Below, piece by piece: positions 3,171 through 38,619 of a DNA stretch of 64,000 nt (position 1 is the first letter of the stretch; every line of letters starts with the position of its first letter). Origin of the DNA: Octopus sinensis. Taxonomy: Eukaryota. The position numbers and the translations under genes were made by a program. The DNA lies in the NCBI RefSeq assembly GCF_006345805.1, contig NC_043001.1, positions 125,364,001-125,428,000 of the forward strand. Reading direction: 5' to 3'. Below the pieces are notes generated by a model. It had not been told where the DNA came from, did not search any database, and worked only from the letters and a program-made list of their open reading frames with translations.

Positions 3171-3437
3171 ATATATACATACATATATATATATATATAT
3201 TATATATACACACACATATATGTACATATATGCGCACGCCTGCACGCACGCACACACACACACACACCTATGTACTTTATATATATGTTTGTGGTAAAAA
3301 GACCACGAATATTTTGGAGAGTATAGATGTTCATATCGACCCCTACATATATCACTAAATACTTTATACTATCGATTCCTGGAAGAACAAAAGTCGAAGT
3401 CGACCTCGGCGAAGCACGAGGTGTGAATTTAATAAAG

Positions 3438-3438
3438 A

Positions 3439-3487
<49 letters not shown>

Positions 3488-3502
3488 GTTGTGTTGTTGT
3501 TG

Positions 3503-3555
<53 letters not shown>

Positions 3556-3614
3556 ACAATAACAATAATAATAATAATAACAACAACAACGATAACAATA
3601 ACAACAACAATAAC

Positions 3615-3676
<62 letters not shown>

Positions 3677-3752
3677 TAATAATAATAATAATACAATTAC
3701 TACTACTACTGTTGCTGTTGCTGCTGCTGTTGTTGTTGTTGTTGTTGTTGTT

Positions 3753-3783
<31 letters not shown>

Positions 3784-3808
3784 TTATTATTATTATCATT
3801 ATTATTTA
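3438..3808. repeat. Compound (ATT)n/(GTT)n/(AAT)n/(ATT)n microsatellite
   Basis: Direct reading. Source of the poly-L/Y/N/I ORFs in the track. Confidence 0.95.
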
Positions 3809-3965
3809 GTGAGAGAGTATCACGCCATGGAAGTGACGCTGAGATACAAATATACAAAGCCCAATATATCCATCATGACTTTCTTTGTCCGATAAGAGTA
3901 CACAGGCATGTGCATCACTACCATAAATTGGAAAAACAGCATAGACAAATATAATTGGCTACACC
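3808..3965 (-). mobile_element. Family G repeat (3' end of a (TAA)n-tailed retroelement)
   Basis: GTGAGAGAG...GCCAT...GTGAC.CTG.G.TACAAATATAC...CATCATGACT, also present at about 59862-60020. Both copies abut (ATT)n. Confidence 0.55.
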
Positions 3966-4503: not shown

Positions 4504-4603
4504 NNNNNNNNNNNNNNNNNNNNNNNNNNNNNNNNNNNNNNNNNNNNNNNNNNNNNNNNNNNNNNNNNNNNNNNNNNNNNNNNNNNNNNNNNNNNNNNNN
4601 NNN
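4504..4603. other. Assembly gap (100 N)
   Basis: Run of N. Confidence 1.
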
Positions 4604-5486: not shown

Positions 5487-6462
5487 TATTATTATTTTAT
5501 GTTTGACTTTTGCTCTGCATTTGTACAAGTTGGCTCCAAGCCTCACCCAGAGACCTCAAGAGACAACAAGTTAGAAGTTCATATTGGTGTTATGCCTTGA
5601 GTACCATATATTTGGTTTTGTACATAGTGTTGTTTAAGAGAATATTTAAGAAACCATAAGAAAATTATGCATTTGTTTTAAAATTTGAGATTACATAGAC
5701 AGTATTTTACGTAGGACATGGGCAGTTCCCATGAGCACTATCTTTTGAATTTCTGCCATTTTGGGGTTCCTGGTATCTGAGCTAGGTAGCAATCAGCCCC
5801 TTTTGCTATCATTCCCAGGGCACCTATGAAAACAGGTATTGTTTTAGTCTTCAGGCTCCACATTTTGCTAATTTCTATTTCAAGATCTTTATACTTGCTC
5901 AGTTTTTGGTAGGTCTTGGTAGATATGTTTATATCGATTGGGACAGTCATAAATGAGGAGGCATGATTTTTGTCTGAAGTCTTTCAATATGATCAATATG
6001 ATGTCTGGCCTATTTGCATCTATCTTTCTGTCAGTTTGAATGGTGAAGTTCCAGAGGAGTGAGATGTGATCATTTGTAAGCACTGGAGGTGGTTTGTGTT
6101 CCCACCAGTTTTTATCATGAGGCAAGTCCAGGTTTTTGCAAATTACCCAGCGAATATATTGTGCAGCTCTATAATGCCTGTTGAGATACTCTGTAGGTGC
6201 AAGAAAACTGCACACGGAGACAACATAATCAATGGTTTCATTTTGTTGCTGACATCCATGGCATATTGGGAAGCTGCCGTTCTTTAATATGTTGGCCTTG
6301 TAGTTCCTTGTAGGTAGGCATTGATCTTGGGCTGCTATGATAAACCCTTCTGTTCCTGATTTTAAGCCAGAAGCTATTAGCTATTGATGGGTAAGGGCTT
6401 TGTCAACATCGGCATTATTCGCTCTCTTTGGGTATATGCCATTGAGAGGTTTTTCTTGCCAT
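5487..6462 (-). mobile_element. R4/Dong-clade non-LTR retrotransposon, 3' part (CCHC knuckle + restriction-like endonuclease + 3' UTR with (TAA)n tail)
   Basis: Minus-strand translation across frameshifts: WQEKPLNG...SGLKSGTEGFIIAAQDQCLPTRNY...CHGC...ETIDYVVSVC...NRHY...LWNFTIQTDRKIDANRPDII...KLSKYKDLEIE...PVFIGALG...VLMGTAHVLRKILSM*. Confidence 0.88.
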
Positions 6463-6464
6463 TT

Positions 6465-7320
6465 ATCAGTCGGGGTAACGATGCTGGCGCGGGTGGGGCT
6501 TTGATCAATTTAGATCAGAGTAAAGCCTTCGATAGGGTCGACCATCGATACCTGGCAGCTGTTCTCAAGGCAGCCGGTTTCGGTCTAGTCTTCCGCGGGT
6601 GGATCGCTGCTTTATACAGCAACATCTGCTCGGTGATACGGGTGAACGGTCACCCTTCGGAGCCGTTTGACATCTCGCGTTCGGTCCGCCAAGGATTCCC
6701 TCTCTCCTCCCTCTTGTACGTATTGACTCTCGAGCCATTACTGCGCAAGTTGGAGGCTTTGAGGGGTATCCCGCGCGATCTAGGAGGTGGAAACAGCGTG
6801 TCTGCTTATGCCGACGACGTCACCGTGATGGTGTCGAGCCACAGGCACATTGACCTGATCGGCGAAACGCTAAACGAATACGAAGCGGTGCCAAGGGCAA
6901 AAATTCTGACTGTAGCGAAAGAGGAGGTATGGTGGACCCGTTTGAAAGGGCTAAGGTCAGACACTTTCCTCTTTGGCCCAGGCCTCATCAACTTTTTCAA
7001 GTTTTACTTGAAAAGGAAGATGAGAGTAGAGAGGGAAGTGCTGTCCGATAGCAAGTTTACTGAAAGGTGGATAAATGTCGCAAGAATGGCCAGTGTGAAA
7101 GAAGCCATTCTGAGGATACACCTGTAAAAAAAAAGGTTTTACAAAAGGAGAAAGGGGCTCGCTACCCCCCTTTTGACAGGCTCCCGTGGCTTTTATGGGT
7201 TTTACCACCAGGAACCTTTCGTAACGCCTCCCCCTATTGGGAGTTTTTCGTTGTTATAATTTTTCGTTGTTACACTGTTTTTACACGGATTTTTACAAAC
7301 GGACAAAACCCCTTTGTAAC
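6465..7320 (+). mobile_element. Tx1/L1-clade LINE fragment (RT core joined by internal deletion to C-terminus and 3' UTR)
   Basis: ALINLDQSKAFDRVDH...SVRQGFPLSSLLYVL...AYADDVTV, then a jump to the C-terminal VWWTRLKG...FFKFYLKRKMRVERE...ERW...HL*. The right boundary is approximate. Confidence 0.85.
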
Positions 7321-8394: not shown

Positions 8395-8605
8395 CTTCAC
8401 TGTTTTACTTGTTTGATGTTGGAGCACCACCTTAAAAGGTTTTTTAGTCGAAGAAAACGGCTCGAGGACTTATTCCTTGTAAACAGTATTTATTGTATCA
8501 GTTTCTTTTGCCGAACTGCTAAATTAAGGGGACTAAAAAAAACAACCAACATCGGTTGTCGAACGATGGTGGGGAAACAAATATTAACACAGACTCACAT
8601 AAACA

Positions 8606-8660: not shown

Positions 8661-8723
8661 TATATATATATGAAAAAACAAGTCAAAATAGAAAATGCTA
8701 AAATAATTTTATAAAGAACATTT

Positions 8724-8761
8724 CAGTACCGGTTTCGGTCATTTTGAGACCTTTTCAACTG
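8724..8761 (-). ncRNA. Minimal type-I hammerhead ribozyme (U3-A8 covariant core), element-sense copy
   Basis: CAG-TTGAAAA-GGTC-TCAAAAT-GACC-GAAA-CCGG-T-A-CTG on the minus strand. Confidence 0.75.
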
Positions 8762-8989
8762 TAACGATTAAATAATTAAATTTAGAAAAATTAGAAGAAA
8801 AGTTTTTTTAAAGGAATATTTGTATAGTTTTCAAATTTCAGTGGCATTCTACCTTTCTCTGACTCCCTTGTTTGCACTTGTGTGTTGGAGGTCGTTGTGA
8901 ATTCTTGGTAGGGTAGGAGGAGAAGAGGGGTGATGAGGAGAAGGGGTGGAGAAATTTGGGAGTGCCTTGATTGTCGTATTTTGAATGGT

Positions 8990-9111
8990 CAGTTGCAGTT
9001 CAATTCAGGAGAATATTTCTATTGAAAGGTTGGTTTGTGGAATTTGCGTAGGCGTTATACTAGAGAGCATTAGTGATAAAGTTAAAGGTAGAAGGTGGAG
9101 AAGAAGAAGAA

Positions 9112-9143
<32 letters not shown>

Positions 9144-9400
9144 AGAAGAATATGACGAGTTGATGATGAAGTGATGATGATTATGAAGAAGAAGAAGAAG
9201 AAGAAGAAGAAGAAGAAGAAAAGAAGAAGAAAAGATGATGATGAATGATGGTGGATGATGATGACGACGATGATGATGATTAATGATGATGATGAAAAAA
9301 GAGGAAGAAGAAGAAAAGAAAACAGAGAAGGGAGAATATGAATGGGTGAAAGTAGTGAGGTGTTGTATGACTTGAAGTTGGCATGTTATGGATTATAGCT
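8990..9400. repeat. (GAA)n/(GAT)n low-complexity tract in the PLE 3' UTR
   Basis: Direct reading. Confidence 0.85.
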
Positions 9401-12011
9401 GTGATTGGGGGCTGATTTGTAATAGATTCTTTGGAATGTAATATTTGTGTGTGTATATTTCTTTTATTCTAAAGTTGAGGTATATTAATCGTTTGTCGTA
9501 GACCCGTTAAGAAGTGGCCTGTATTTTGTAATAAGAGAGTTTCTTTACTTATTCGTTGTCTCGAGGTTGTATCGTCCCTAAATTGGTAGAGGGGAAAAAT
9601 CCTGAAGCCTGTGTTTTTTGTTGTTGGCGCAGTATCTATGTGTTGGCTGAAAGCTATTTTTCTGTTTTGGGGAATTTTATCTGGGATCTGTGCAGGGCCA
9701 TTCGTTTACGCAAACTATTTTTTGTTTGGCCTATGTACTGCTCTTGACACACCGGAGCAGGTTAGTGAGTATATTAGGTTCTCCGAAGCACATGTGAAGT
9801 TCTTTTCACTGTAAACCGTTGTCCCTGTTTGAAGGAGAACTCTGATCCCTCAATTAGATAATCGCATATCCCGCAATTGGGTCTTCCACATTTTTTAACT
9901 GTCGGCTTCTGTGTTGAAGAGTGAATTCGGGCTTGTGTTAGGAGACTTTTCATTTTCATGGATTTAGGCTGCCTCTTGCTTTTTATGATCGTGTGTGTTT
10001 GGAGGATTGTGTTCATTCTGTGGTCCTTTTTTTAGGAGGGGTATGTTGTGGAGGATGGTGCCGAAGGCTTCGTTATTGAGAGGGTTGTGTTTGGAGATGT
10101 ATGGTAAGGCTTTTGGTCGTAAGTTTTTCTTTGATTTGGGATGTCTCAGTTCCTTGATGTTAAGTTGAAGGGCACGTTGAATGCACTTGTCAATAAGTGA
10201 AGGTGGATGTTTCCTGGTGATAAGGGTATCTTTTAGTTCTTGTAGTCGTGTGTCTCTGGTGTTTGCATTAGAGACTATAGTGCATATCCTTTTTGCTAGA
10301 TTGAAGAGGATATTCATCCTGGTGTGTCTTGGGTGGCATGAATTGAATGGAAGATATTGCTTAGAATCTGTAGGCTTATAATATATGTCTGTTTCTATTA
10401 CATTATTAGCTTTCTTAATGAGGATATCGAGGAAGGGGAGTTGTTGCTGGGTATATTCCATCGTGAATTGGATGTTTACGTCCAGTCCGTTTAAAATTTC
10501 CTGGAATTCTATGAGTTTTTCTATATTTTTATGCCAAAGAATGAAACAGTCATCTAGATATCTCTTCCAGTTGTTTTCTATGTAGATGGAGAAAGGGCTG
10601 CCATATCTTTCTAGAACCTTACGATACAGACTGATCTCTAGATATCCTATGACTAGGTTGGCAAAGGAAGTGGGCCATTCGTGTACCCATCGCAGTCCCC
10701 GATTTTTGTCGGTAGAAGTTGTCATGAAGGCGAAGAAGTTATTTTCCAGATGATTTAACCCTTTCTATCACGAACTCTTTTTTGATGCGATGTGGTAGTT
10801 CGTTGGCGTGATTCTCTAGCCAGAATTGGATTGCCTCTAGTCCTAGGTTTGGGGGATATTGGAGTAGAGGTTGACTACATCGAAGGATACCAGTATGGTG
10901 TTTTTGTTTATAGTATTCGGTAGGTGATTGAGCATATCCAGGTCGTCCCTTATAATCCTTTTGACATGTTTGAGGAGTGGTTTTAACAGGGTGTCTAAAA
11001 AGTTACTGAGGCGGTGGGTTTCGCATGCGAGACCTGCTATTATGGGTCTCAATTTGAGGTCATTAGGATTAGGGACTTTAATTATTTTGTCTGTAGCTAT
11101 CTTGCATGCGTTGCTTATTTTCTCACTTTTGTGTATCTTAGGTATACCGTAGAACTGGCTGTTTTTACTTGTGAAATTGGTCATATAATCATATTCTTTG
11201 TCGGTGAGCCCTTCTTTGTATGGGTTTAACATGGATTTAGTTCCCTCATTATTTTTTGTTGACTGTAGTTTTGTGCCTTTTCATAGTATGTTGTGTCTTC
11301 CAGCATAGATAGTACCAAAGTTATGTAAAATGTCGTATCCATTAGACAACAGCACTCCCTTTATCGGCTCTTTGATTGTTATTGTTTTATCTTGTTTTAA
11401 TTTGTTCAACTCAGCCCATTCTTTTTTGCTGAAGTTTGGTTTGTGTTTTTGTTGTGCATATGTTGATATGGGTAATTTGATATGTGTTTACAGAAATCAT
11501 CAAGTGTTTTGTTCTTACCTTTAGAGGGGTTGTAGTTTATTCCTATTTCTGACTAACGATTCGTCCTCGTTGTATTTGTCGTATAGCTCCTCAGTAGTCT
11601 AATTTTCTGCAGAATTCTGCGATGTCTTCTTCATTTCATTGTAGTTGGGGTGTTGTGGGGTGGGTGTAAACTTGAGTCCTTTGGAAAGTATGTTTATTTG
11701 GTTTGTTGTTAGTTCCTTGTGAGTTAGATTGACAATTTTTATTACTTTTGGTTCCTCCTGCTTGTTTGGTGCTATCTTGTGTCTCTGTGTTTGCGTATTG
11801 GGTCTAAAAAATCCCAAATTTCTCCACCCCTTCTCCTCATCATCCCTCTTCTCCTTCTACCCTACCAAGAATTCACAACGACCTCCAACACACAAGCGCA
11901 AACAAGGGAGTCAGAGAAAGGCAGAATGCCACTGAAATTTGAAAACTATACAAATATTCCTTTAAAAAAACTTTTCTTCTAATTTTTCTAAATTTAATTA
12001 TTTAATCGTTA

Positions 12012-12049
12012 CAGTTGAAAAGGTCTCAAAATGACCGAAACCGGTACTG
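12012..12049 (+). ncRNA. Minimal type-I hammerhead ribozyme (U3-A8 covariant core), inverted-pLTR copy
   Basis: Identical motif on the + strand. Predicted cleavage 3' of A12046. Confidence 0.75.
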
Positions 12050-12131
12050 AAATGTTCTTTATAAAATTATTTTAGCATTTTCTATTTTGACTTGTTTTTT
12101 CATATATATCAACTCGTGTGTTCCTTTTCAC

Positions 12132-12315: not shown

Positions 12316-13083
12316 TATGGATGGATTGATGGATGGATGGACGGACGAACGGATGGACGGACGGATGGTTGGATGGATGGATGGATGGATGGATAGATGG
12401 ATGGATGGATGAATGGACGGACGGACGGACGGACGGATGATGTACGTATAACCCCTGTATTTCGAGTCACGCATACTCTATCGTCAGAGGCACCAGACAT
12501 ATATTTTGCTCTTGATGATATCCTATGAGCAACCCAGAATCGACAAGCCACTTGTAAAGCCAATCTTCAAAGAATTAAGTTTTATTAACTTTACATTGCT
12601 AAAAGGCATTGAGTGCTACATTCCATAATAGTACCCAATGGTTATATAAACAGTAATTTAATATCTAACTTTTTATCAATATATATATATCAGGAACGTG
12701 TCGAATGGATAGACAAGGTAAGTAGTATCCACCTAAAACTATAAATATTTATTCTTTGGTCAAAGAAATAAGTGGTTTACAATTCATTATAAAATTTCTA
12801 GTTCTAAAGCATGATTTTCGGTGCACAATCCGGTAAATGACTATTATTTTGATATCAGATAGACACGATTTCCGCTGCCTTTCAACTTCATTGTATATAC
12901 TAAGCGTAACGATAATAATCGCGCATGCCGTGAGTTCGGATCTATAAAATATATAAAATCTAATTGACATGCAAACAGAAATTTCAACTGCTTCCGTAGG
13001 TTTCGTAACAGAATGAAAGTGCCCAGCTTGCATTACGTTTCACGGTGTGCTGTCGGTTTCTAATGATGAAGCTAATTACATGT

Positions 13084-15829: not shown

Positions 15830-16050
15830 TCCTGTCTGACCACCTCTGTCATGCCATCGCCATTATTGACCGCTAGCTACTAAAGCTTTCTTTTTATTCT
15901 TTCTCTGTTTATTTTCTCGTATTCCTTTCTGTTGAAGAGCGTAGACTCGAAACGTAACACACTTTCTCACCTTCCCGAGCGTTAAACTAATACACCTGTT
16001 TGTTGTTTACACATGTCTTTATTTTTTTTTTTTTTTTTTGTAAATTCCAA
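15830..16050 (+). mobile_element. Short PLE-type non-coding element with a degenerate hammerhead
   Basis: CTGTTGA-A-GAGC-GTAG-ACTC-GAAA-CG-T-A at 15929-15956. The downstream CTTCCCGAGCGT..A.TAATA is similar to the 35157-35340 element. Confidence 0.5.
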
Positions 16051-16436
16051 CTGTATATGAACTTGACCTGGCGAGAAGCCTGCGGTATACACCATACTTT
16101 GAAATTTACCACTTTCGAGGTTCCGCTCGCGATGAAATATATAGAGCCTAGATCTTATCTTCTCCCTTCCTTAACTCTTGTATATATAACGATGAATAGC
16201 CTTCGCGTAAATCACTGGTTCGTTTTGTTTTCTTACTTTATTATTATCTTATAATCATCTCATAATAATGACCTTTATGACTCGTATTACTACTTCAGCC
16301 AATATAAATTTATATATTTGTCTCTATCTGTCATAAATAGCCTTTTTCTATTTGCAATATGCATTTTCGTTGATTTTTCATATTTTACCCTTACATTTCC
16401 ACGTGTATTTTATATTTTCTTTTCGTAACATATTTC

Positions 16437-19030: not shown

Positions 19031-19062
<32 letters not shown>

Positions 19063-19230
19063 ATATATACGACGGGCTTCTTTCAGTTTCCGTCTACCAA
19101 TCCACTCACAGGCTTTGGTCGGCCCGAGGCTACAGTAGAAGACATTGCCCAAGATGCCACACAGTGGGACTGAACCCGAACCATGTGGTTGGTAAACAAG
19201 CTACTTACCACACAGCCATCCTGCGCCTAT
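18826..19230 (-). mobile_element. SINE family B, full copy
   Basis: TACTCTTT tail, 3' module, internal (TA)n, CORE-like and tRNA head, all in reverse orientation. Confidence 0.85.
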
Positions 19231-19234
19231 AGTA

Positions 19235-19430
19235 TATAGTTAATCAAAACAAATATCCAAACCGAAAACAAAAAAACACACATGCGAGGACGTGGAACAA
19301 CTATGTATTATTGACGCTCAGGAAGAAGGGAAGAAGGAGGGTTTAACGTTCGAGCGGAGATCTTCTCGGAAACATAGGAGAAGGGAGACAGAGGAAAAAA
19401 TATCGCCAACAGTACACACGAGGTCACATT
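19235..19430 (-). mobile_element. Short HHR-bearing element (same family as 35157-35340), decayed core
   Basis: Reverse complement CTCCTATGTTTCCGAGAAGATCTCCGCTCGAACGTTAAACCCTCC...GAGCGTC...TTTTGATTAAC(TA)n. Confidence 0.7.
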
Positions 19431-19454
19431 TTGATATATATATATATATATATA

Positions 19455-22134
19455 TCTTTTCCCCGTCTGTCTTGATAGACAATGGGTCGCGCCAAGGGTG
19501 GGCTACTTTGATGATGAGCAGCGTCTGCTGTGACTGAACAGTCCAATTCTAGAGTGGCAGTCCCTGGTACAGTTGCTGCACACGAACATCGATGGGTACG
19601 GTGGGGTTGTGCTGCAGTTGTCCTCCTCCTGTCCCGCCTGTCCGACCACAGCTGTGCTATCCTTTCCTCAGCCATGGAAACGCCTTTCCTCACTGTCCGA
19701 CGCCAGGCGCAGAGCGGTCAGCAGCTGTTACCTCCACGTGTCCACACAGATGTTGGCAGTCCTCAGGTCGCGCTTGCACACATCCCTGTATCGTAGCTGT
19801 GGACGTCCCTTGGGTCGGGATCCTGTGGTGAGTTCGCTGTACAGGATGTCTTTAGGCATGCGACCGTCCTGCATGCGGCAGACGTGTCCGAGCCAGCGCA
19901 GTCGTCTCCGCACGAGAGGGCATACATGCTTGGCATATTAGTCTGTTCTAGGATGACTCCGTTTGGTACTCGGTCCTTCCAGGAGATGCCAAGGATCCGT
20001 CGAAGACACTGCATGTGGAAGCCGCTGAGGCGGCATTCTTGCCGGGTGTATGTTGTCCAGCTCTCGCTGCCGTAGAGTAGGGGGCTCAGCACGCAGGCTC
20101 GGTACACTGCGATCTTGGTGGTTATTGTGAGCATGTTGTTTTCCCACACTCTCCTGGAGAGCTTAGCCATGGCAGCAGCAGCCTTCCCAATCCGTCTGTC
20201 CAGCTCCGGCTCGAGGGACAGGCTGCTGGAGACCGTCGATCCCAGGTAAGTGAACTGTTCACACCTGCAAGCTGTGGTCGCCGACACTGATGCTGGGGAC
20301 CCCTCCGACGTCCTGGCCCATGATCTCTGTCTTTTTCAGGCCGATGGTAAGGCCGAACTCTTGGCAGGCATCCGCCAGGGAGCTGACCAGCCTCTGGAGA
20401 CCCGGCTAGTTGTGTGATTTAGGGCGGCATCGTCAGCAAAGAGGATCTCTTGATCAGCACCTGACGGACTTTGGTCTTAGCTCTGAGGCGCGCAAGATTG
20501 AACAATCCACCATCAGCCCTGGTGTGGAGGAACACTCCGTCGTCGGACGTTCTGAAGGCATAGACAGGACAAGGGAGAAGAAAATTCCGAAGAGCGTCGG
20601 CGCCAGAACGCAACCCTGTTTCACTCCACTCTGGATGGGGAACGACTCCGAGGGCGATCCGTCAAACTGCACTGTTCCCTGCATACCGTCGTGAAAGGAG
20701 GTGATGAGTTTCAGCAGTCTGGGAGGGCAACCTATCCTACCCAGGAGCGCAAACAGCCCTCCCTGCTGACTGAGTCGAACGCCTTAGCCAGGTCGATGAA
20801 GGCCACGTATAGGGACTGTCTCTGTTCTCGACTCTTTGCTTGAAGCTGCCTGAGTGAGAAGATCATGTCGATTGTAGACCTCTCTGCCCTAAAGCCAGAC
20901 TGAGACTCGGGGTACACACGCTCTGCAAGCATTTGCAACCTCTTCAGGACCACCCTGGCAAATGCCTTACCGACAGTGCTGAGCAGTGATATGCCCCTGT
21001 AATTATTACAGTCCCTTCTGTCCCCTTTGTTTTTATACAGTGTGATGATGTTTGCGTCACGCATATCCTTAGGGACAGAGCCCTCCTCCCAGCACTGACA
21101 GAGCAGCTCGTGGAGATGGCCCAGAAGGGCTGGCTTCCCACACTGGATGACTTCTGCGGGGATGCCGTCTTGCCCTGGTGCTTTGCCCCGAGCGAGTGAG
21201 TCAATTGCTTTGCTCAGTTCTTCCTTTGTTGGAGGCAGGTCAAGCTCCTCCATGACAGGCAGAGCAGGAATGCCGGCGAGGGCAGACCTGGTGACCACAT
21301 TCTCAGTGGAGTAGAGGTTTTGGTAATGCTCGACCCCCCTCTCCATCTGCTTCGCTCGGTCCTTGATGACCTCGCCATCCCTGGACTTCAGTGGAGCAAC
21401 CTTGCTGACAGTGGGCCCGAATGCTTTCTTCATCCCCTCGTACATCCCTTTCACGTTACCACTGTCAGCACAGCACTGGATGTTCTGGCATAAGTTCTGC
21501 CAGCAGATGTTGGCGCAACGTCTGGCCGTCCTCCGGGCGTCGCTTCTGGCTGTTCTCAGAGTAGCCAGGTTCTTTTCTGATGGGTCGCGCTTATAGTTGA
21601 CCAGTGCTTCCCCCTTGGCAGCAATGACAGGCTCCATCTCAGGCAGGTGAGCTTCAAACCAGTCTTGATTTCTCCGCTCCCTCTTTCCTAGGGATGACAT
21701 GGCTATTCTGCAAGTGGTGTCGCGAATAAGCTGCCATCTCTCCTCGATGGACGTGGCTGCGTGATCTTTAAGGGCCTCCTCCATGCGGTTGGTGAATTCC
21801 GAGCGGAGGTCGGGGTTGGTTGTCCTGGCGGTGTTGATGCGTGGGCGGCTTTTCCCTACGGGACGGCGGATTTTCTTTGGGGCCAATCGGACCCTGCTGC
21901 ACACCAGAGAGTGGTCTGTATCACAGTCAGCACCATGGTAGCTGCGTGTGAGAAGCACACTGCCGAGGTGGGCTCGCCGGGTGATGACCATGTCCAGTTG
22001 GTGCCAGTGTCCGGACCTTGAGTGCCTCCATGAGACCTGGTGTTGTGGCTTAGTCATGAAGAATGTGTTGGTAACGCAGAGTTTCCGGTAAGAGCAAAGC
22101 TCCAACAGTCTCTGGCCATTCTCATTCATCTTCC

Positions 22135-22138
<4 letters not shown>
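19455..22138 (-). mobile_element. RTE/BovB-like LINE, 5'-truncated ORF2 (end of APE + RT + C-terminus + 3' UTR), few frameshifts
   Basis: GKMNENGQRLLELC...TNTFF...SWRH.RSGHWHQLD...DCDTDHSLV; KAPGQDGIPAE; NYRGISLLS; GFRAERSTIDMIF; FIDLAKAFDSV; GVKQGCVLAPTLF; LFADDA; FTYLGS; RRLRWLGHVCRM...RPQLRY.D. Both ends abut (TA)n. Confidence 0.95.
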
Positions 22139-25172: not shown

Positions 25173-26804
25173 GAGGTCGACTTTGCCATTCATCCTTGAG
25201 GGGTCGATAAATTAAGTACCAGTTACGCACTGAGGTCGATGCAATCGACTTAATACCTATGTCTGTCCTTGTTTGTCCCCCTCCGTGTTTAGCCCCTTGT
25301 GGGTAGTAAAGAAATAGGTATTTTGTCTGCCGTTACGTTCTGAGTTCAAATTCCGCCGAGGTCGACTTTGCCTTTCATCCTTTCAGGGTCGATAAATTAA
25401 GAAACCAGTTACGCACTGAGGTCGATGTAATCGACTTAATCCGCTTGTCTGTCCTTGTTTGTCCCCCTCCGTGTTTAGCCCCTTGTGGGTAGTAAAGAAA
25501 TAGGTATTTTGTCTGCCGTTACGTTCTGAGTTCAAATTCCGCCGAGGTCGACTTTGCCTTTCATCCTTTCAGGGTCGATAAATTAAGAAACCAGTTACGC
25601 ACTGAGGTCGATGTAATCGACTTAATCCGCTTGTCTGTCCTTGTTTGTCCCCCTCCGTGTTTAGCCCCTTGTGGGTAGTAAAGAAATAGGTTTTTTGTCT
25701 GCCGTTACGTTCTGAGTTCAAATTCCGCCGAGGTCGACTTTGCTTTTCATCCTTTCAGGGGTCGATAAATTAAGTACCAGTTACGCACTGAGGTCGATGC
25801 AATCGACTTAATACCTATGTCTGTCCTTGTTTGTCCCCCTCTATGTTTAGCCCCTTGTGGGTAGTAAAGAAATAGGTATTTTGTCTGCTGTTACGTTCTG
25901 AGTTCAAATTCCGCCGAGGTCGACTTTGCCTTTCATCCTTTCAGGAGTCGATAAATTAAGTACCAGTTACGCACTGAGGTCGATGCAATCGACTTAATAC
26001 CTATGTCTGTCCTTGTTTGTCCCCCTCTATGTTTAGCCCCTTGTGGGTAGTAAAGAAATAGGTATTTTGTCTGCTGTTACGTTCTGAGTTCAAATTCCGC
26101 CGAGGTCGACTTTGCCTTTCATCCTTTCAGGGTCGATAAATTAAGTACCAGTTACGCACTGAGGTCGATGCAATCGACTTGATCCGTTTGTCTGTCCTTG
26201 TTTGTCCCCTCTATGTTTAGCCCCTTGTGGATAGTAAAGAAATAGGTATTTTGTCTGCTGTTACGTTCTGAGTTCAAATTCCGCCGAGGTCGACTTTGCC
26301 TTTCATCCTTTCGGGGTCGATAAATTAAGTACCAGTTACGCACTGAGGTCGATGCAATCGACTTGATCCGTTTGTCTGTCCTTGTTTGTCCCCTCTATGT
26401 TTAGCCCCTTGTGGGTAGTAAAGAAATAGGTATTTTATCTGCCGCTACGTTCTGAGTTCAAATTCCGCCGAGGTCGACTTTGCCTTTCATCCTTTCGGGG
26501 TCGATAAATTAAGTACCAGTTACGCCCTGAGGTCGATGCAATCGACTTGATCCGTTTGTCTGTCCTTGTTTGTCCCCTCTATGTTTAGCCCCTTGTGGGT
26601 AGTAAAGAAATAGGTATTTTGTCTGCTGTTACGTTCTGAGTTCAAATTCCGCCGAGGTCGACTTTGCCTTTCATCCTTTCGGGGTCGATAAATTAAGAAA
26701 CCAGTTACGCACTGAGGTCGATGCAATCGACTTAATACCTATGTCTGTCCTTGTTTGTCCCCCTCTGTGTTTAGCCCCTTGTGGGTAATAAAGAAATAGG
26801 TATT
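25173..26804 (+). repeat. Tandem array of nine 184-186-bp SINE-A body units
   Basis: GAGGTCGAC recurs at 25173, 25358, 25544, 25730, 25916, 26102, 26286, 26470 and 26654. Each complete unit carries the B-box but no A-box head. Confidence 0.95.
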
Positions 26805-33049: not shown

Positions 33050-33423
33050 TGCCTACCAATTTATATATTATTATAGAACACACTATATCTGCCTATCTTT
33101 ATCCCCAACGAGAAACTTAACGAAACCTTTGTACACGAGATAAATTTCTTAAATAGGATTTCATGACCGTTTGGTAGAAGAATTTAAGGTCAATTAATAA
33201 TCATAATAAATTACGCCTCCGACCGAAAGCATTGGTGTACTAAAATACAACCGCAAACATTCAAAGAAAACTAGAAGAAATCAAACCATGTGATAAAAAC
33301 AAGCCAGAATTCTATCTCGGTAGTGAAAGATGCCAATGTAATTCATGCTCATCGGAAAGCAGTAGGGTTATATCTTGTCGAGCGTGTACATGTGTCTGGA
33401 CAGTGTGGGGCAAGTGGAATAAT
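33050..33423 (+). promoter_or_regulatory. Probable 5' UTR part of the FBXL16 exon, containing several short uORFs
   Basis: Acceptor-like TATTTCCTTTCAG| ending at 33049, downstream of a long (CT)n tract. Upstream ATG-stop units start at 33163, 33288, 33330, 33345 and 33390. No transcript evidence. Confidence 0.45.
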
Positions 33424-34619
33424 ATGTCGACTATACGTAGGGCTTATATGGAATTGTCGAATGGGATCAGGGGCCTTCGTTTACATAGGGACCAGACTCC
33501 TCAGGCTTCGGCATCCACTTCGTCAAAGGATGCTTCGATTACGACACAAATTCCTTCGTTAATCTCATCTAAGTCAACCGTGCCCAATACTTTGTCTTCA
33601 ACAACTGGGGTTGGAGGCAAAATCTTGCGTCTTTCGAAACCAAACCAGACCTACAACAGCAATGTTATTAACACGTCGTCTTCTTCAACCTCTTCGACTG
33701 TATCATCAGTTGCCATTCGAAGGATGCGAATATTAAATGGGCGGTATAGCCCCACATCTGTCCAAGAATTATTTTTAGACGAGAAATTTCTGTCCCGCTT
33801 CTTTTCGTATTTTTCGCCTCAGGAGAAAGGTGACTTAGCACGAGTGTGTAAACGATGGAGAAATATTCTATATAACGTGTGTTACTGGACAGATGTCATA
33901 CCTGTTATATCATGTCGAAAATGGTGTAACGATGTAGAAGGCAGAAATAAATTTTTCGAAAGCCTAATTCTGCGAGGCTTTGACTCGATATGTTTATTTG
34001 GGGCGACAGACGAAGATATTCAGGACTTTGTTAACAATTTCCCCCCTTGTAGGAAACAAATTCGGTCTATCAGTGTACGTTGTTCAAATGTAACGGATGT
34101 CGGGCTCGAATTGATGTTTAAGAAAATGACTTCTGTTTATCGTTTGGAACTTTCTGGTTGTAATGAAATCACAGAGACAGGTTTGTGGTCGTGTTTGAAC
34201 CCCAAAATTGTCTCACTTTCTGTAAGCGACTGCATCAATGTAGCAGACGATACGGTCGGCGCCATAGCACAGTTACTTCCGTCTCTGTACGAACTTAATC
34301 TTCAAGCCTACCATGTTACAGATGCTGCTCTTTCTTTCTTCAGTGCCAAACAGAGCTATACCTTATGCATTCTTCGTCTGCAGTCGTGTTGGGAAATTAC
34401 TAATCACGGTATAGTAAATATTGTACATTCGTTACCAAATCTTACCGTCCTCAGTCTATCAGGCTGCAGTAAAATAACAGATGACGGAGTTGAACTTATA
34501 GCGGAAAATCTTCGGAAGTTACGCCTTTTGGACTTATCTTGGTGTCCTAAAATTACCGACGCCTCTTTGGAATATATTGCTTGCGATTTAAGTCAACTAC
34601 AAGAACTTGTTTTGGACAG
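33424..34619 (+). CDS. FBXL16: F-box/LRR-repeat protein 16, first large coding exon (gene continues beyond this exon)
   Basis: Stop-free frame: MSTIRRAYMELSNGIRGL, a Ser/Thr-rich linker, an F-box (LFLDEKFLSRFFSYF...LARVCKRWRNILY), then AMN1-type LRRs (LELSGCNEITETGLW, LSVSDCINVADD, LNLQAYHVTD, LRLQSCWEITNHG, LSLSGCSKITDDG, LDLSWCPKITDASLEYIACDL..LQELVLDR). These match the FBXL16 family as I recall it. The exon ends GACAG|GTAAAT (phase-2 donor). The ORF-track start at 33403 is a GTG; the first ATG is 33424. Confidence 0.93.
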
Positions 34620-34868
34620 GTAAATCACAATTTATCTTATTTCCTCTTTTCATTGATTTTATTGATTTGACTTCATGCTTTGTCTTATAGGACACGTGAA
34701 ACACACACACATACACACACACACATAAATATATATTCATCCATATATACAAACATACATGCATTTATATCCTTTCTTGCTAAGCCGATTTAGCCTCTTT
34801 CACAATTCCCTGTATGCATCTCTTCTAATTTACTAAAGGCATTCTAAGCCTTTTGTAACACTGTTGTA

Positions 34869-34934
<66 letters not shown>

Positions 34935-34941
34935 GTATTTT

Positions 34942-35029
<88 letters not shown>

Positions 35030-35080
35030 GTATATATATGTATATATGTATATGTGTATATATGTATATATATGTATATA

Positions 35081-35156
<76 letters not shown>

Positions 35157-35159
<3 letters not shown>

Positions 35160-35340
35160 TTTTTTCCTCCGTCTTCCCTTCTCTGGATCTTTCCTTCTCC
35201 TATGTTTCTGACGAAGAGCTCCGCTCGAAACGTTAAACCCTCCTTCTTCCCTTCCTTCCTGAGCGTCCAATAATACTATATTTGTTCCACGTCTTCGCAT
35301 TGTTGTGTTTTCTCTTTGTGTTTTCATGTTTGGATTAACT
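35157..35340 (+). mobile_element. About 185-bp non-coding element flanked by (TA)n and carrying a hammerhead motif (retrozyme/mini-PLE-like)
   Basis: Homologous to 19235-19430. 3' end TTTGGATTAAC(TA)n, also seen alone at about 22908-22920. Confidence 0.75.
35204..35238 (+). ncRNA. Minimal type-I hammerhead ribozyme (canonical CUGACGA core plus an extra A)
   Basis: GTTT-CTGACGA-A-GAGC-TCC-GCTC-GAAA-CG-T-T-AAAC. Predicted cleavage 3' of U35234. Confidence 0.72.
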
Positions 35341-36242
35341 ATATATATATATATATATATATATACTGTTGAATTATATGTGTGTGTGTAGTAATATGCT
35401 AAAAGATGATCATTCAATTGACCACATCCATTTCCGTTTACAAACTTGACCTTGACCTTTTATTTATCTTTACAAAAATTGTTCTTTTCTTTCCAGTAAT
35501 CTACAGTTTAAATCGATCCGGTTACAAACCCTACTCATAACTTATTGAACATTTTGTTTTCTTTTTTTTTGAGGGGCGGAAAAATTCATTTGCAGTTGTT
35601 TTTACACGTATTAACAATTTCATGGCGTAAGGGATAAAATATAAATGAAAATCAACAGACATTAGTATCGAAGTGTTATTTTATTAGGTCGATTGGAATT
35701 ATTATATTCGCTGTGATTTAAACCTCTAATGTCCTTGATAAACATCTTAATAGCTACGTCTCCTTTATTCTCTTCTATAAACCAGATGCCATGTGCCTAA
35801 TCAAAAGAAATCAATATTTATTTCTTCCTTTCTTTTCAAACAAATCAATAATGATGTTGTTCTTTTAACGACCACCGTTAAAGCAAGAGTTTAACAACTC
35901 TTGGAGAATCGATTACGTGAACCGGTTTCGATAGCTGTTTCAAGACATTTTCATTTTTAGGCTTATGTGTATTTTCCTTGTCTTCATTCACATCTATTTC
36001 TCATAGGAATTTTAAATCAACTACAGTTCTTGGTTGGTACCCTGTTTTATTCGACCCTGGAACGAAGTCACGTCAAGTAAACTATGATCAAATTTGAACT
36101 CAAAGCCGAAAAAAACTGGCTGCATCTAAATACCACAAAACGTTTTGTTCGACGCTCTAACATCACAGCCTCATTTTGTCATCGCTTAAAAGTCTGAAGT
36201 CTTACGTTTATGCAAAAATAAATAACTAAATAGTAAATGAAA

Positions 36243-37600: not shown

Positions 37601-38207
37601 GTCTTAAAAAATATGCAGCTTATTACCTGTGGAAGAAACTAGCATTTAATGCAAGAATGACTACAAGAGTGTGCAAGACAAGCCTGAGTTCACAGCTCAG
37701 AGTGAAGCAGATTAGAAATAAATCTTCAACCTCTATCACAGGTAACACTGCCTGGTGATTTGGTATCCATTACCTACTGCTAGGGCACGAGCAAATGTTA
37801 AAACTTCTGAAGTGGGCCATTACAAAAAGAAGTTGCTAATTTCTGTACTTGGGGAACTGCGGAAATTTAGAATAAAATGTTCTGCTCTGAAATTTATCAA
37901 AATTTTTAGAGTGGATTGGAACACCTGACTCACGAATAAATAGTCCGATACCTTACCTACTTGTTCATTTCACAGAATAGCATCTATTAAATTTTTTTCA
38001 AGTAAACTTAAGTCATAAAGATAACTTATCAATTACAAAAGGAATGTCCTATGTACTTCTGGATATGCTACATAACTCATAGAATGTTTGGTATATGGTT
38101 CATAGTTGTACTTCTTCATTCAATTTGCAGTCAAATCATGGATATTTTATCATTGTTGATGGACATGCTGCTTGAAAATCTATGTTCATTAGCAAAAAAA
38201 CAAAAAA

Positions 38208-38619
38208 AGTGGCTGTGTGGTAAGTAGCTTGCTAACCAACCACATGGTTCTGGGTTCAGTCCCACTGCGTGGCATCTTGGGCAAGTGTCTTCTGCTATAG
38301 CCCCGGGCCGACCAATGCCTTGTGAGTGGATTTGGTAGACGGAAACTGAAAGAAGCCTGTCGTATATATGTATATATATGTGAGTGTGTGTGTATATGTT
38401 TGTGTGTCTGTGTTTGTCTCCCTAGCATTGCTTGACAACCGATGCTGGTGTGTTTCCGTCCCCGTCACTTAGCGGTTCGGCAAAAGAGACTGATAGAATA
38501 AGTACTGGGCTTACAAAGAATAAGTCCCGGGGTCGATTTGCTCAACTAAAGGCGGTGCTCCAGCATGGTCGCAGTCAAATTACTGAAACAAGTAAAAGAG
38601 TAAAAGAGAGTAAAGAGTA
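38208..38619 (+). mobile_element. SINE family B, full copy
   Basis: Same architecture as 3995-4413. Confidence 0.88.

What the first reader, a model, noticed from the sequence alone, without database searches (positions are those of the whole stretch)
35204..35238. Sense-strand hammerhead ribozyme about 585 nt into the FBXL16 intron
Seen: intact CUGACGA and GAAA, 4-bp stems I and II, palindromic ACGU stem III and a UU cleavage site, in the same orientation as the gene and close to the splice donor. The extra A between A9 and G10.1 has a natural precedent in a viroid (CChMVd) hammerhead. Inference: if active, it would cut the nascent pre-mRNA soon after the first coding exon and could tune splicing or expression. 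Caveat: minimal HHRs usually need a dimer partner, and U17 is a weak site, so a lone copy may be nearly silent.
Basis: partly seen in the sequence, partly recalled or inferred. Interest (0 to 1): 0.78.

Follow-up and report, generated by a model that had tools for sequence, protein, structure and literature searches.

The report
Transposon-borne minimal hammerhead relic in intron
The hammerhead-ribozyme motif is really there. It is the stripped-down "minimal" type that rides on Penelope-like retroelements, it sits in a short repeat inserted into a (TA)n microsatellite, it is missing from the closest relative's intron, and alone it is probably inactive, so it is an ordinary transposon relic and not a gene switch.

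Summary
Window 35204-35238 (+) reads GUUU-CUGACGA-A-GAGC(UCC)GCUC-GAA-ACGU-U|AAAC, 583 nt past the donor of an FBXL16-like exon and on the sense strand. A minimal-hammerhead descriptor is expected about 0.001-0.013 times per shuffled window, so this is more than chance.

The gene-regulation inference is not supported.
- The motif carries the published hallmarks of metazoan "min-HHRs" of Penelope-like elements (PLEs): an unpaired base between A9 and G10.1, a G10.1-C11.1 pair, a palindromic 15.2-16.2, no helix III of its own, and a 4-bp helix I.
- It lies in a ~185-215-nt interspersed repeat bounded by (TA)n. Two more copies are in the window and one is in Argonauta hians. All three have broken CUGA boxes.
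- The first 10 kb of the A. hians orthologous intron has no copy.
- No partner motif lies in the ≥29 kb of intron held here.
- The lone RNA prefers a fold that buries U4-G8 (-7.7 vs -3.8 kcal/mol).
- The window also holds a PLE whose terminal repeats carry a different min-HHR.

Verdict: a new member of a known kind, probably catalytically silent. Derivation of this repeat from a PLE was tested and not shown.

The parts
35204..35238 (+). Minimal type I hammerhead motif. It has helix I (4 bp), the CUGACGA box, a bulged A (35215), helix II (4 bp, UCC loop), the GAA box, the palindrome ACGU in place of helix III, and U17. The predicted cut is 35234|35235.
   Evidence: Read directly. It is the only descriptor hit of this type in the window. 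Shuffle expectation is 0.013 or less per window.
35157..35341 (+). Copy A of a ~185-215-nt interspersed repeat that carries the motif. Relative to copies B and C it is shorter at the 5' end.
   Evidence: blastn against the window, alignments, nhmmer E=4.7e-49.
34873..35156 (.). (TA)n/(CATA)n microsatellite that bounds copy A on the 5' side.
   Evidence: Tandem Repeats Finder; sequence.
35340..35365 (.). (TA)13 that bounds copy A on the 3' side. It may be the insertion target or the element's own tail.
   Evidence: Tandem Repeats Finder.
19238..19452 (-). Copy B of the repeat, 84% identical to A. Its hammerhead relic at 19341-19373 is broken: CCGA-GA (U4C plus a 1-nt deletion), GAUC in helix II, and G-AAC.
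15831..16060 (+). Copy C of the repeat, ~73% identical to A. In its relic at 15925-15960 the core is CUGUUGA (A6U), helix II is reduced to 3 bp, and helix I no longer pairs.
33448..34621 (+). FBXL16-like coding exon (F-box plus LRRs). The donor GT is at 34622-34623. The next exon is not in the window, so the intron is longer than 29 kb.
   Evidence: ORF, Pfam, homologues, transcript L002 aligning to 33249-34621, no downstream exon found by tblastn.

Best explanation
The motif is a genuine descendant of a retroelement-borne minimal hammerhead ribozyme (min-HHR), the class described for Penelope-like elements and related non-autonomous elements of animals.

It arrived in the FBXL16-like intron as part of a short (~185-215 nt) non-coding retroelement copy that sits in a (TA)n microsatellite. 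In the life of the element, such ribozymes are thought to act in multimeric or tandem transcripts. Two copies pair through the palindromic ACGU to build helix III, and each cuts after position 17, which processes element RNA.

Here the copy is solitary. It has no helix III of its own and no partner nearby, and its core bases U4-G8 can pair with C15.2-A1.1. It is therefore most likely catalytically silent and neutral for the host gene.

Shown here: the motif, its hallmarks, its place in a repeat family, decay of the sister copies, absence from the relative's intron, and the presence of hammerhead-bearing PLEs in the same window.

Inferred: that the family's founder had an active ribozyme, that PLE enzymes rather than LINE enzymes move the family, and that this copy does not cleave.
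For: (1) Four hallmarks that the PLE min-HHR paper says emerged without being in its descriptor are all present: a base between 9 and 10.1, G10.1-C11.1, a palindromic 15.2-16.2, and a short helix I of 4-5 bp (PMC4209133; sequence).

(2) The motif lies in a repeat family. There are three copies in the window and one in A. hians at L004 5382-5620. The majority consensus over the motif is CUGAUGA-A-GAGC-UNN-GCUC-GAAACGU. The extra A is present in all copies.

(3) Each sister copy carries a different inactivating change in the CUGA box: U4C plus a deletion, A6U, and U4C plus G5A. This is what neutral decay from an intact founder would give.

(4) All window copies abut (TA)n. (TA)n is a preferred PLE target, and PLE hammerheads sit near the 3' end (PMC8557442).

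(5) The same window holds a PLE (RT plus GIY-YIG remnants). Its 298-nt inverted arms, 99% complementary, each carry a min-HHR with the published U3-A8 core variant. That motif gets a sub-threshold Rfam HH9 hit. The homologous O. vulgaris PLE locus has the covarying version (L006).

(6) A scan that fixed only helix II and the GAAACGU block found a eukaryotic metagenome contig (L009). There the unrequired CUGAG box, the extra A, C17 and a helix I changed on both sides at three pairs are all present. A second, inverted min-HHR-like motif lies ~350 nt away.

(7) Evidence for silence: the first 10 kb of the orthologous A. hians intron has no copy; no second motif lies in the 28.7 kb of intron downstream; the monomer's lowest-energy fold is -7.7 kcal/mol with the core sequestered against -3.8 for the hammerhead fold, and the dimer's lowest-energy fold is an extended duplex; single min-HHRs were inactive in vitro (PMC4209133).
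Against: - No PLE ORF adjoins any copy of the repeat, and the repeat shows no significant similarity to the PLE terminal repeat in the window.
- LINEs and SINEs in this window also end in (TA)n, so the (TA)n flanks do not single out PLE machinery.
- Helix I pairs only in copies A and B, which are identical there. Copies C and the A. hians copy do not pair.
- Within the family there is no compensatory change. All three come from the unrelated contig L009.
- Only four family copies could be obtained.
- No Rfam hammerhead model scores the motif.
- Helix II is 4 bp, shorter than the 6-8 bp typical of the described PLE min-HHRs.
- No cleavage data exist.
Confidence: 0.72

Rival explanations
1. It is a chance look-alike. 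The repeat family carries a conserved hairpin block (GAAGAGC-NNN-GCUCGAAACGU) for some other reason, such as recognition by its reverse transcriptase. Copy A happens to have CUGA and a pairing helix I next to that block.
For: - The invariant block across the copies is helix II plus GAAACGU, while the CUGA box differs in every copy.
- Helix I does not pair in two of the four family copies.
- The lowest-energy fold is a simple extended hairpin.
- There is no Rfam hit.
- A ~1-Gb genome would hold tens of chance hits at the rates.
Against: - The majority consensus of four independently decayed copies restores CUGAUGA.
- All four unbiased hallmarks of the min-HHR class are present together.
- L009 shows the same helix II and GAAACGU block with a CUGA box that the search did not require and a covaried helix I. 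I estimate the chance of that at about 5e-4.
- The per-window expectation is 0.013 or less.
Confidence: 0.13
2. It is a real hammerhead on a SINE-like element moved by a LINE, not by a PLE. The (TA)n on the 3' side would be the element's retroposition tail, and the ribozyme would trim read-through transcripts, as proposed for the Schistosoma Sm-alpha elements.
For: - The LINE 3' end next to copy B and the tRNA-derived SINEs in the window also end in (TA)n.
- All copies are short and of similar length (185-230 nt), with a shared 3' end GATTAAC(TA)n in A and B.
- There is no similarity to the PLE terminal repeat.
Against: - No tRNA, 5S or other small-RNA head was detected in the repeat (ARAGORN; Rfam at E<=1 on copy B).
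- The 3' end shows no similarity to the LINE 3' end (by eye).
- The motif's architecture matches the PLE min-HHR class, not the canonical type I hammerhead with loop-loop contacts seen in Sm-alpha.
Confidence: 0.12
3. It is a host-co-opted intronic ribozyme. The sense-strand motif would cleave nascent FBXL16 pre-mRNA, perhaps by pairing in trans through ACGU with transcripts of other family copies, and so tune expression.
For: - It is on the sense strand, close to the donor, and is the only family copy seen with an intact core.
- Conserved intronic hammerheads exist in amniotes (cited in PMC7229834).
Against: - It is absent from the orthologous A. hians intron, whose sequence is unrelated from the donor onward.
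- It is transposon-borne.
- It has no cis partner. A 4-bp trans helix III is weak, and the competing fold is favoured.
- One intact copy among four at ~10-25% divergence is what neutral decay would leave (my estimate).
- In Xenopus, retrozyme copies are depleted from introns, which suggests that active ones are selected against there (bioRxiv 10.64898/2026.07.22.740005).
Confidence: 0.03

Closest known systems
Minimal hammerhead ribozymes (min-HHR) of metazoan Penelope-like elements (Cervera & de la Pena 2014, PMC4209133)
   Same: - Type I topology with a canonical CUGANGA...GAAA core.
- No helix III of its own, with a palindrome at 15.1-16.1 that allows a dimeric helix III.
- An unpaired base between A9 and G10.1, and a G10.1-C11.1 pair.
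- A helix I of 4-5 bp without loop-loop contacts.
- Mostly dispersed single copies in a genome that also has PLEs.
   Different: - Helix II is 4 bp with a 3-nt loop, against 6-8 bp in the described families.
- This copy is not in a recognisable PLE terminal repeat. The carrier repeat shows no similarity to the PLE in the window, whose own hammerhead uses the U3-A8 core and an ACCGGU palindrome.
Non-LTR retrozymes of animals (Cervera & de la Pena 2020, PMC7229834; Li et al. 2026 preprint)
   Same: - A short (170-400 nt) non-coding repeat unit carrying one type I hammerhead.
- Solitary 'monomer' copies of such units are known.
- A proposed link to PLEs.
   Different: - Retrozymes are defined by tandem arrays, and in invertebrates by canonical hammerheads with loop 1-loop 2 contacts.
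- Here the copies are solitary, the hammerhead is of the minimal type, and it sits in the middle of the unit, not split across the unit ends.
Chrysanthemum chlorotic mottle viroid (+) hammerhead (extra A10; De la Pena & Flores 2001, as cited in PMC4209133)
   Same: An extra unpaired A between A9 and G10.1 that is compatible with catalysis.
   Different: The viroid ribozyme is type III, has a stable helix III and tertiary contacts, and sits in a replicating circular RNA. There is no evolutionary link to this motif.
Conserved intronic hammerheads of amniotes (Rfam HH9/HH10)
   Same: A sense-strand hammerhead inside an intron of a protein-coding gene.
   Different: The amniote ribozymes are ultraconserved at orthologous sites and fold as stable monomers. 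This one is lineage-specific, transposon-borne, lacks helix III, and gets no Rfam hit.
Newt satellite 2 and Schistosoma Sm-alpha hammerheads
   Same: Repeat-borne animal hammerheads. The newt one has a very short helix III and works as a dimer.
   Different: Those have canonical helices I and II with loop contacts and occur in tandem satellites or in SINE-like units with a tRNA-like promoter. Neither is seen here.

Membership tests
Hammerhead ribozyme (catalytic motif) | Conserved core boxes C3U4G5A6N7G8A9 and G12A13A14, with A15.1-U16.1 and H17 at the cleavage site | tested here: met
   CUGACGA at 35208-35214, GAA at 35227-35229, A15.1 at 35230, U16.1 at 35233, U17 at 35234.
Hammerhead ribozyme (catalytic motif) | Three helices around the core | tested here: inconclusive
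   Helices I and II can form with 4 bp each. Helix III cannot form within one molecule (ACGU with no loop) and exists only as an intermolecular 4-bp duplex.
Hammerhead ribozyme (catalytic motif) | Match to a curated hammerhead covariance model (Rfam clan CL00010) | tested here: not met
   No hit at gathering score on the window and none at E<=10 on 35100-35350. The PLE motif at 8707-8772 does get a weak HH9 hit.
Hammerhead ribozyme (catalytic motif) | Site-specific self-cleavage | not testable with these tools
   This needs in vitro transcription or RNA end mapping. The energy model favours a competing fold (-7.7 vs -3.8 kcal/mol).
PLE-type minimal hammerhead (min-HHR) | Helix III absent or reduced to a short palindrome (dimer-dependent) | tested here: met
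   ACGU at 35230-35233 is its own reverse complement.
PLE-type minimal hammerhead (min-HHR) | [quoted passage not shown] | tested here: met
   A at 35215, present in all four family copies and in L009. This hallmark is described in PMC4209133.
PLE-type minimal hammerhead (min-HHR) | G10.1-C11.1 closing pair and a short helix I (4-5 bp) without loop contacts | tested here: met
   G35216-C35226; GUUU/AAAC.
PLE-type minimal hammerhead (min-HHR) | Located in the terminal repeat (pLTR) of a Penelope-like element or a truncated copy of one | tested here: not met
   No RT or GIY-YIG ORF lies next to any copy. The unit against the window's PLE terminal repeat scores within the shuffle range. PLE proximity was seen only for the other motif at 8724-8761 and 12012-12049.
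PLE-type minimal hammerhead (min-HHR) | Forms consensus families with covariation in the helices | tested here: inconclusive
   Five sequences give 82% of cells paired and 3 pairs changed on both sides. All three changes come from L009, and two family copies do not pair in helix I.
Non-LTR retrozyme | Tandem repeats of 170-400 bp, each unit with a type I hammerhead | tested here: not met
   All copies are solitary. No tandem array of the unit was found.
Non-LTR retrozyme | Expressed as linear and circular RNAs of unit length | not testable with these tools
   No transcriptome of the source species is on hand.
Conserved host intronic hammerhead (HH9/HH10-like) | Orthologous conservation of site and core across species | tested here: not met
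   The A. hians intron (L001 11204-21203) has no copy and is unrelated in sequence from the donor onward.

The most novel reading that the evidence does not exclude
The repeat is an undescribed cephalopod family of short non-autonomous elements carrying a canonical-core min-HHR. The intact sense-strand copy in FBXL16 would then be cut at a low level when it pairs in trans, through ACGU, with abundant transcripts of sister copies. That would give a transposon-derived, dose-dependent brake on a gene with a very long first intron.
Probability: 0.04. Interest if true: 0.7.

Novelty: new member of a known kind. Interest (0 to 1): 0.25.

Why it matters
If the reading is right, this is one more example of minimal hammerheads spread through animal genomes by retroelements, here in an argonaut or octopod genome. 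I found no paper on hammerheads in that group in the library.

It is useful as a caution. An intact-looking ribozyme in an intron need not be a host regulator.

It also gives a small lead for transposon annotation in cephalopods. There appear to be two min-HHR types: a canonical C3-G8 core with a bulged A on a ~200-nt repeat, and a U3-A8 core on a PLE.

It does not open a long-standing question.

Tried and rejected
- **Rfam.** All 4227 families on the whole window and a permissive local scan gave no hammerhead hit for the finding.
- **Search for more copies through spurious ORFs.** I searched the 60-aa minus-strand translation of the unit against the 5.8-billion protein set and got nothing. 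This used one of the three searches.
- **Metagenome scan with the conserved block GAAGAGCTNNGCTCGAAACGT**. It gave three hits. Two look like chance matches: L007 is a GC-rich (62%) contig and L008 a coding-looking stretch whose upstream bases do not complete a hammerhead core. One was informative (L009).
- **Orthologous site.** The A. hians locus L001 was fetched. Its intron is not alignable and has no copy, so an 'empty site' could not be shown base by base, only absence within 10 kb.
- **Link to PLEs.** I fetched PLE loci from A. hians (L004, L005) and O. vulgaris (L006). blastn found no unit copy. nhmmer found one in L004, 4.5 kb from the PLE ORF and not obviously part of it. Local alignment of the unit to the window's PLE terminal repeat was not significant.
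- **Small-RNA head in the unit.** I looked for a tRNA, 5S or other head and found none.
- **The conserved block at 38252-38357.** I considered it as the next exon and rejected that. It is a tRNA-derived SINE.
- **A candidate in L004 at 6176-6205 / 12487-12516 (CUGAUGA...GAAAC).** Rejected because it has no G10.1-C11.1 and no regular helix II (by eye).

Full report
**1. What is in the sequence.**

Window 35204-35238 (+) reads GTTTCTGACGAAGAGCTCCGCTCGAAACGTTAAAC. In hammerhead numbering:
- Helix I is GUUU (35204-35207) paired with AAAC (35235-35238).
- The core is C3-A9 = CUGACGA (35208-35214), followed by an extra A at 35215.
- Helix II is GAGC/GCUC closed by UCC, with the G10.1-C11.1 pair.
- G12 A13 A14 follow.
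- A15.1-C15.2-G16.2-U16.1 forms the self-complementary ACGU with no loop.
- U17 is at 35234, so the predicted cut is 35234|35235.

**2. Chance.**

My first descriptor finds only this site in the window. In 300 Markov shuffles it gives 0.013 hits per window with a palindromic or hairpin helix III, and 0.11 with any helix III. A min-HHR descriptor that requires G10.1-C11.1 and a palindromic helix III gave 0 hits in 400 shuffles. My hand estimate for that descriptor is about 0.001 per window.

So the motif is unlikely in one window. A ~1-Gb genome would still hold some tens of chance hits, which is why I examined the context.

No Rfam hammerhead model matches, even at E<=10 on a 251-nt slice. This is expected for a motif without helix III and with a bulged base.

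**3. Gene context.**

ORF 33403-34623 carries F-box and LRR domains. It is 98% identical in protein, and 90.7% in DNA, to the FBXL16-like gene of Argonauta hians. The window therefore comes from a close relative of that species, not from the same genome.

An octopod transcript assembly (L002) aligns to 33249-34621 and stops exactly at the GACAG|GTAAAT junction. Its protein then continues with CTHITDIG.... That continuation is not encoded anywhere downstream in the window. The motif is therefore 583 nt into a sense-strand intron longer than 29 kb.

**4. The motif belongs to a repeat.**

The 184 nt between two (TA)n tracts (35157-35340) recur in the window at 19238-19452 (-), 84% identical, and at 15831-16060 (+), ~73% identical. 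A profile of the three copies finds a fourth in A. hians at L004 5382-5620.

All window copies start after a (TA)n or (CATA)n tract. Copies A and B end in GATTAAC(TA)n.

Over the hammerhead segment:
- The block GAAGAGC-NNN-GCUCGAAACGU, including the extra A, is nearly invariant.
- The CUGA box differs in every copy: CUGAC (A), CCGA- (B), CUGUU (C), CCAAU (A. hians).
- The majority consensus is CUGAUGA-A-GAGC...GCUC-GAAACGU, an intact core. This fits independent decay from a hammerhead-bearing founder.
- Helix I pairs in A and B, which are identical there, but not in C or the A. hians copy. Support from within the family is therefore limited.

**5. What is known.**

Cervera & de la Pena 2014 (PMC4209133) described thousands of "min-HHRs" in animal genomes, located in the terminal repeats of Penelope-like elements and mostly dispersed as single motifs. 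Their features are:
- no helix III, or a short palindromic one, so that two copies must pair;
- a helix I of 4-5 bp;
- a conserved unpaired nucleotide between 9 and 10.1;
- a G10.1-C11.1 pair;
- a palindromic 15.2-16.2.

In that study, single motifs showed no detectable cleavage in vitro, and dimers and trimers showed only low activity.

Craig et al. 2021 (PMC8557442) place PLE hammerheads near the 3' end. They also note (TA)n as a preferred target and describe inverted 5'-truncated copies.

The finding meets every motif-level hallmark. The "anomalous" extra A is in fact typical of the class.

**6. PLE hammerheads in the same genome.**

The window holds a degenerate PLE on the minus strand at ~9400-11300. 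It has RT motifs and a GIY-YIG remnant, and its homologues carry PF01541 and PF26215. It is flanked by 298-nt inverted arms that are 99% complementary (8664-8961 and 11812-12109).

Each arm contains cagUUGAAAA-GGUC..GACC-GAA-ACCGGU-A|cug. This is a min-HHR with the published U3-A8 core variant, and it gets a weak Rfam HH9 hit. The homologous O. vulgaris PLE locus has UUGAUAA-GGUUC..GAACC-GAA-ACAUGU-A|aaau about 1 kb 3' of its ORF (L006). There, helices I and II and the palindrome all differ while pairing is kept.

So hammerhead-bearing PLEs are resident here. However, the finding's carrier repeat shows no significant similarity to this PLE's terminal repeat.

**7. An outside relative.**

I scanned metagenome contigs for only GAAGAGCTNNGCTCGAAACGT and got three hits. 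One of them, the eukaryotic contig L009, has the unrequired CUGAG just upstream, the extra A, C17, and a helix I changed on both sides at three pairs. A second, inverted min-HHR-like motif lies ~350 nt away, with helix I GACU/AGUC, an extra U, ACGU, C17 and a G5A core.

That opposite-strand pairing is an arrangement reported for min-HHRs in Schistosoma mansoni, where motifs ~100-700 bp apart lie on opposite strands. It argues that this particular helix II/ACGU hammerhead type is real and recurrent.

**8. Is this copy likely to act on FBXL16?**

- The A. hians intron differs from the window right after the donor and has no copy of the unit in its first 10 kb. The insertion is therefore not a conserved feature of the gene.
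- No other min-HHR of any type lies on the sense strand in the 28.7 kb of intron downstream or the 583 nt upstream.
- ViennaRNA gives the 35-mer a lowest-energy fold of -7.7 kcal/mol in which U4-G8 pair with C15.2-A1.1. The hammerhead fold is at -3.8, the same competing helix persists with 10-75 nt of flank, and two copies prefer an extended duplex.
- The GUU triplet at the cleavage site is generally reported as a weaker site than GUC (from my own knowledge, not tested here).
- One intact copy among four at 10-25% divergence is about what neutral decay would leave (my estimate).

**9. Verdict.**

The motif is best read as a transposon-borne minimal hammerhead of the PLE/retrozyme class that is probably silent as a lone copy. 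The regulatory inference is not supported.

Three points remain open:
- whether PLE or LINE enzymes move the carrier repeat, since LINE and SINE tails here are also (TA)n;
- whether the family's young copies keep and covary the ribozyme;
- whether any cleavage occurs.

Noticed in passing
window 8664-12109 (arms 8664-8961 and 11812-12109; hammerheads 8724-8761 (-) and 12012-12049 (+)): A degenerate Penelope-like element (RT plus GIY-YIG remnants on the minus strand) sits between 298-nt inverted arms that are 99% complementary. Each arm carries a minimal hammerhead with the U3-A8 core variant and an ACCGGU palindrome. It gets a weak Rfam HH9 hit, and a covarying counterpart lies at L006 11723-11767 (O. 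vulgaris).
   Followed up: partly
L009 3596-3650 (-) and 3999-4045 (+): A eukaryotic metagenome contig with dynein-like ORFs holds two inverted min-HHR-like motifs ~350 nt apart. One has the same helix II/ACGU as the finding and an intact CUGAGGA core. The other has a G5A core.
   Followed up: partly
L004 39-87 (-): A. hians has a candidate min-HHR, CUGACGA-A-GGGG..CCCC-GAA-AAUU-U, with an interrupted helix I. It scores 16 bits (E 0.26) with model R1 and lies at the edge of the fetched locus.
   Followed up: no
window 25500-26804: A tandem array of a 184-nt unit, at least 7 copies at 95% match. By eye the unit resembles the 3' part of a tRNA-derived SINE (not tested). It has no hammerhead motif. 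A related sequence lies at L001 5381-5525.
   Followed up: no
window 19060-19225 (-), 38207-38370 (+), and about 8400-8600 (-): Copies of an abundant SINE-like repeat that I judge tRNA-derived (GGCTGTGTGGTAAGTAGCTTGC...GGTTCGGGTTCAGTCCCACTG; ARAGORN called no tRNA in the window). One copy is also found in the A. hians intron (L001 15842-15947). That copy was the only alignable block between the two introns and could be mistaken for an exon.
   Followed up: partly
window 19470-22138 (-) and 6384-7127 (+): LINE fragments with RVT_1 domains. One of them (the minus-strand copy, 19470-22138) ends in a C-terminal CHSRIGLFSHSRRC motif followed by a (TA)n tail that abuts repeat copy B. LINE tails here are therefore (TA)n too.
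   Followed up: no
L001 10001-11203 (A. hians gene model P0001): The annotated A. hians FBXL16-like protein stops at the TAA that overlaps the splice donor (GAC AGG TAA). The public model is probably truncated at exon 1, because the octopod transcript continues for ~100 more residues.
   Followed up: partly
window 4504-4603; 3327-3857: An assembly gap of 100 N. Nearby lie long trinucleotide microsatellites that read as poly-L, Y, N or I ORFs.
   Followed up: no
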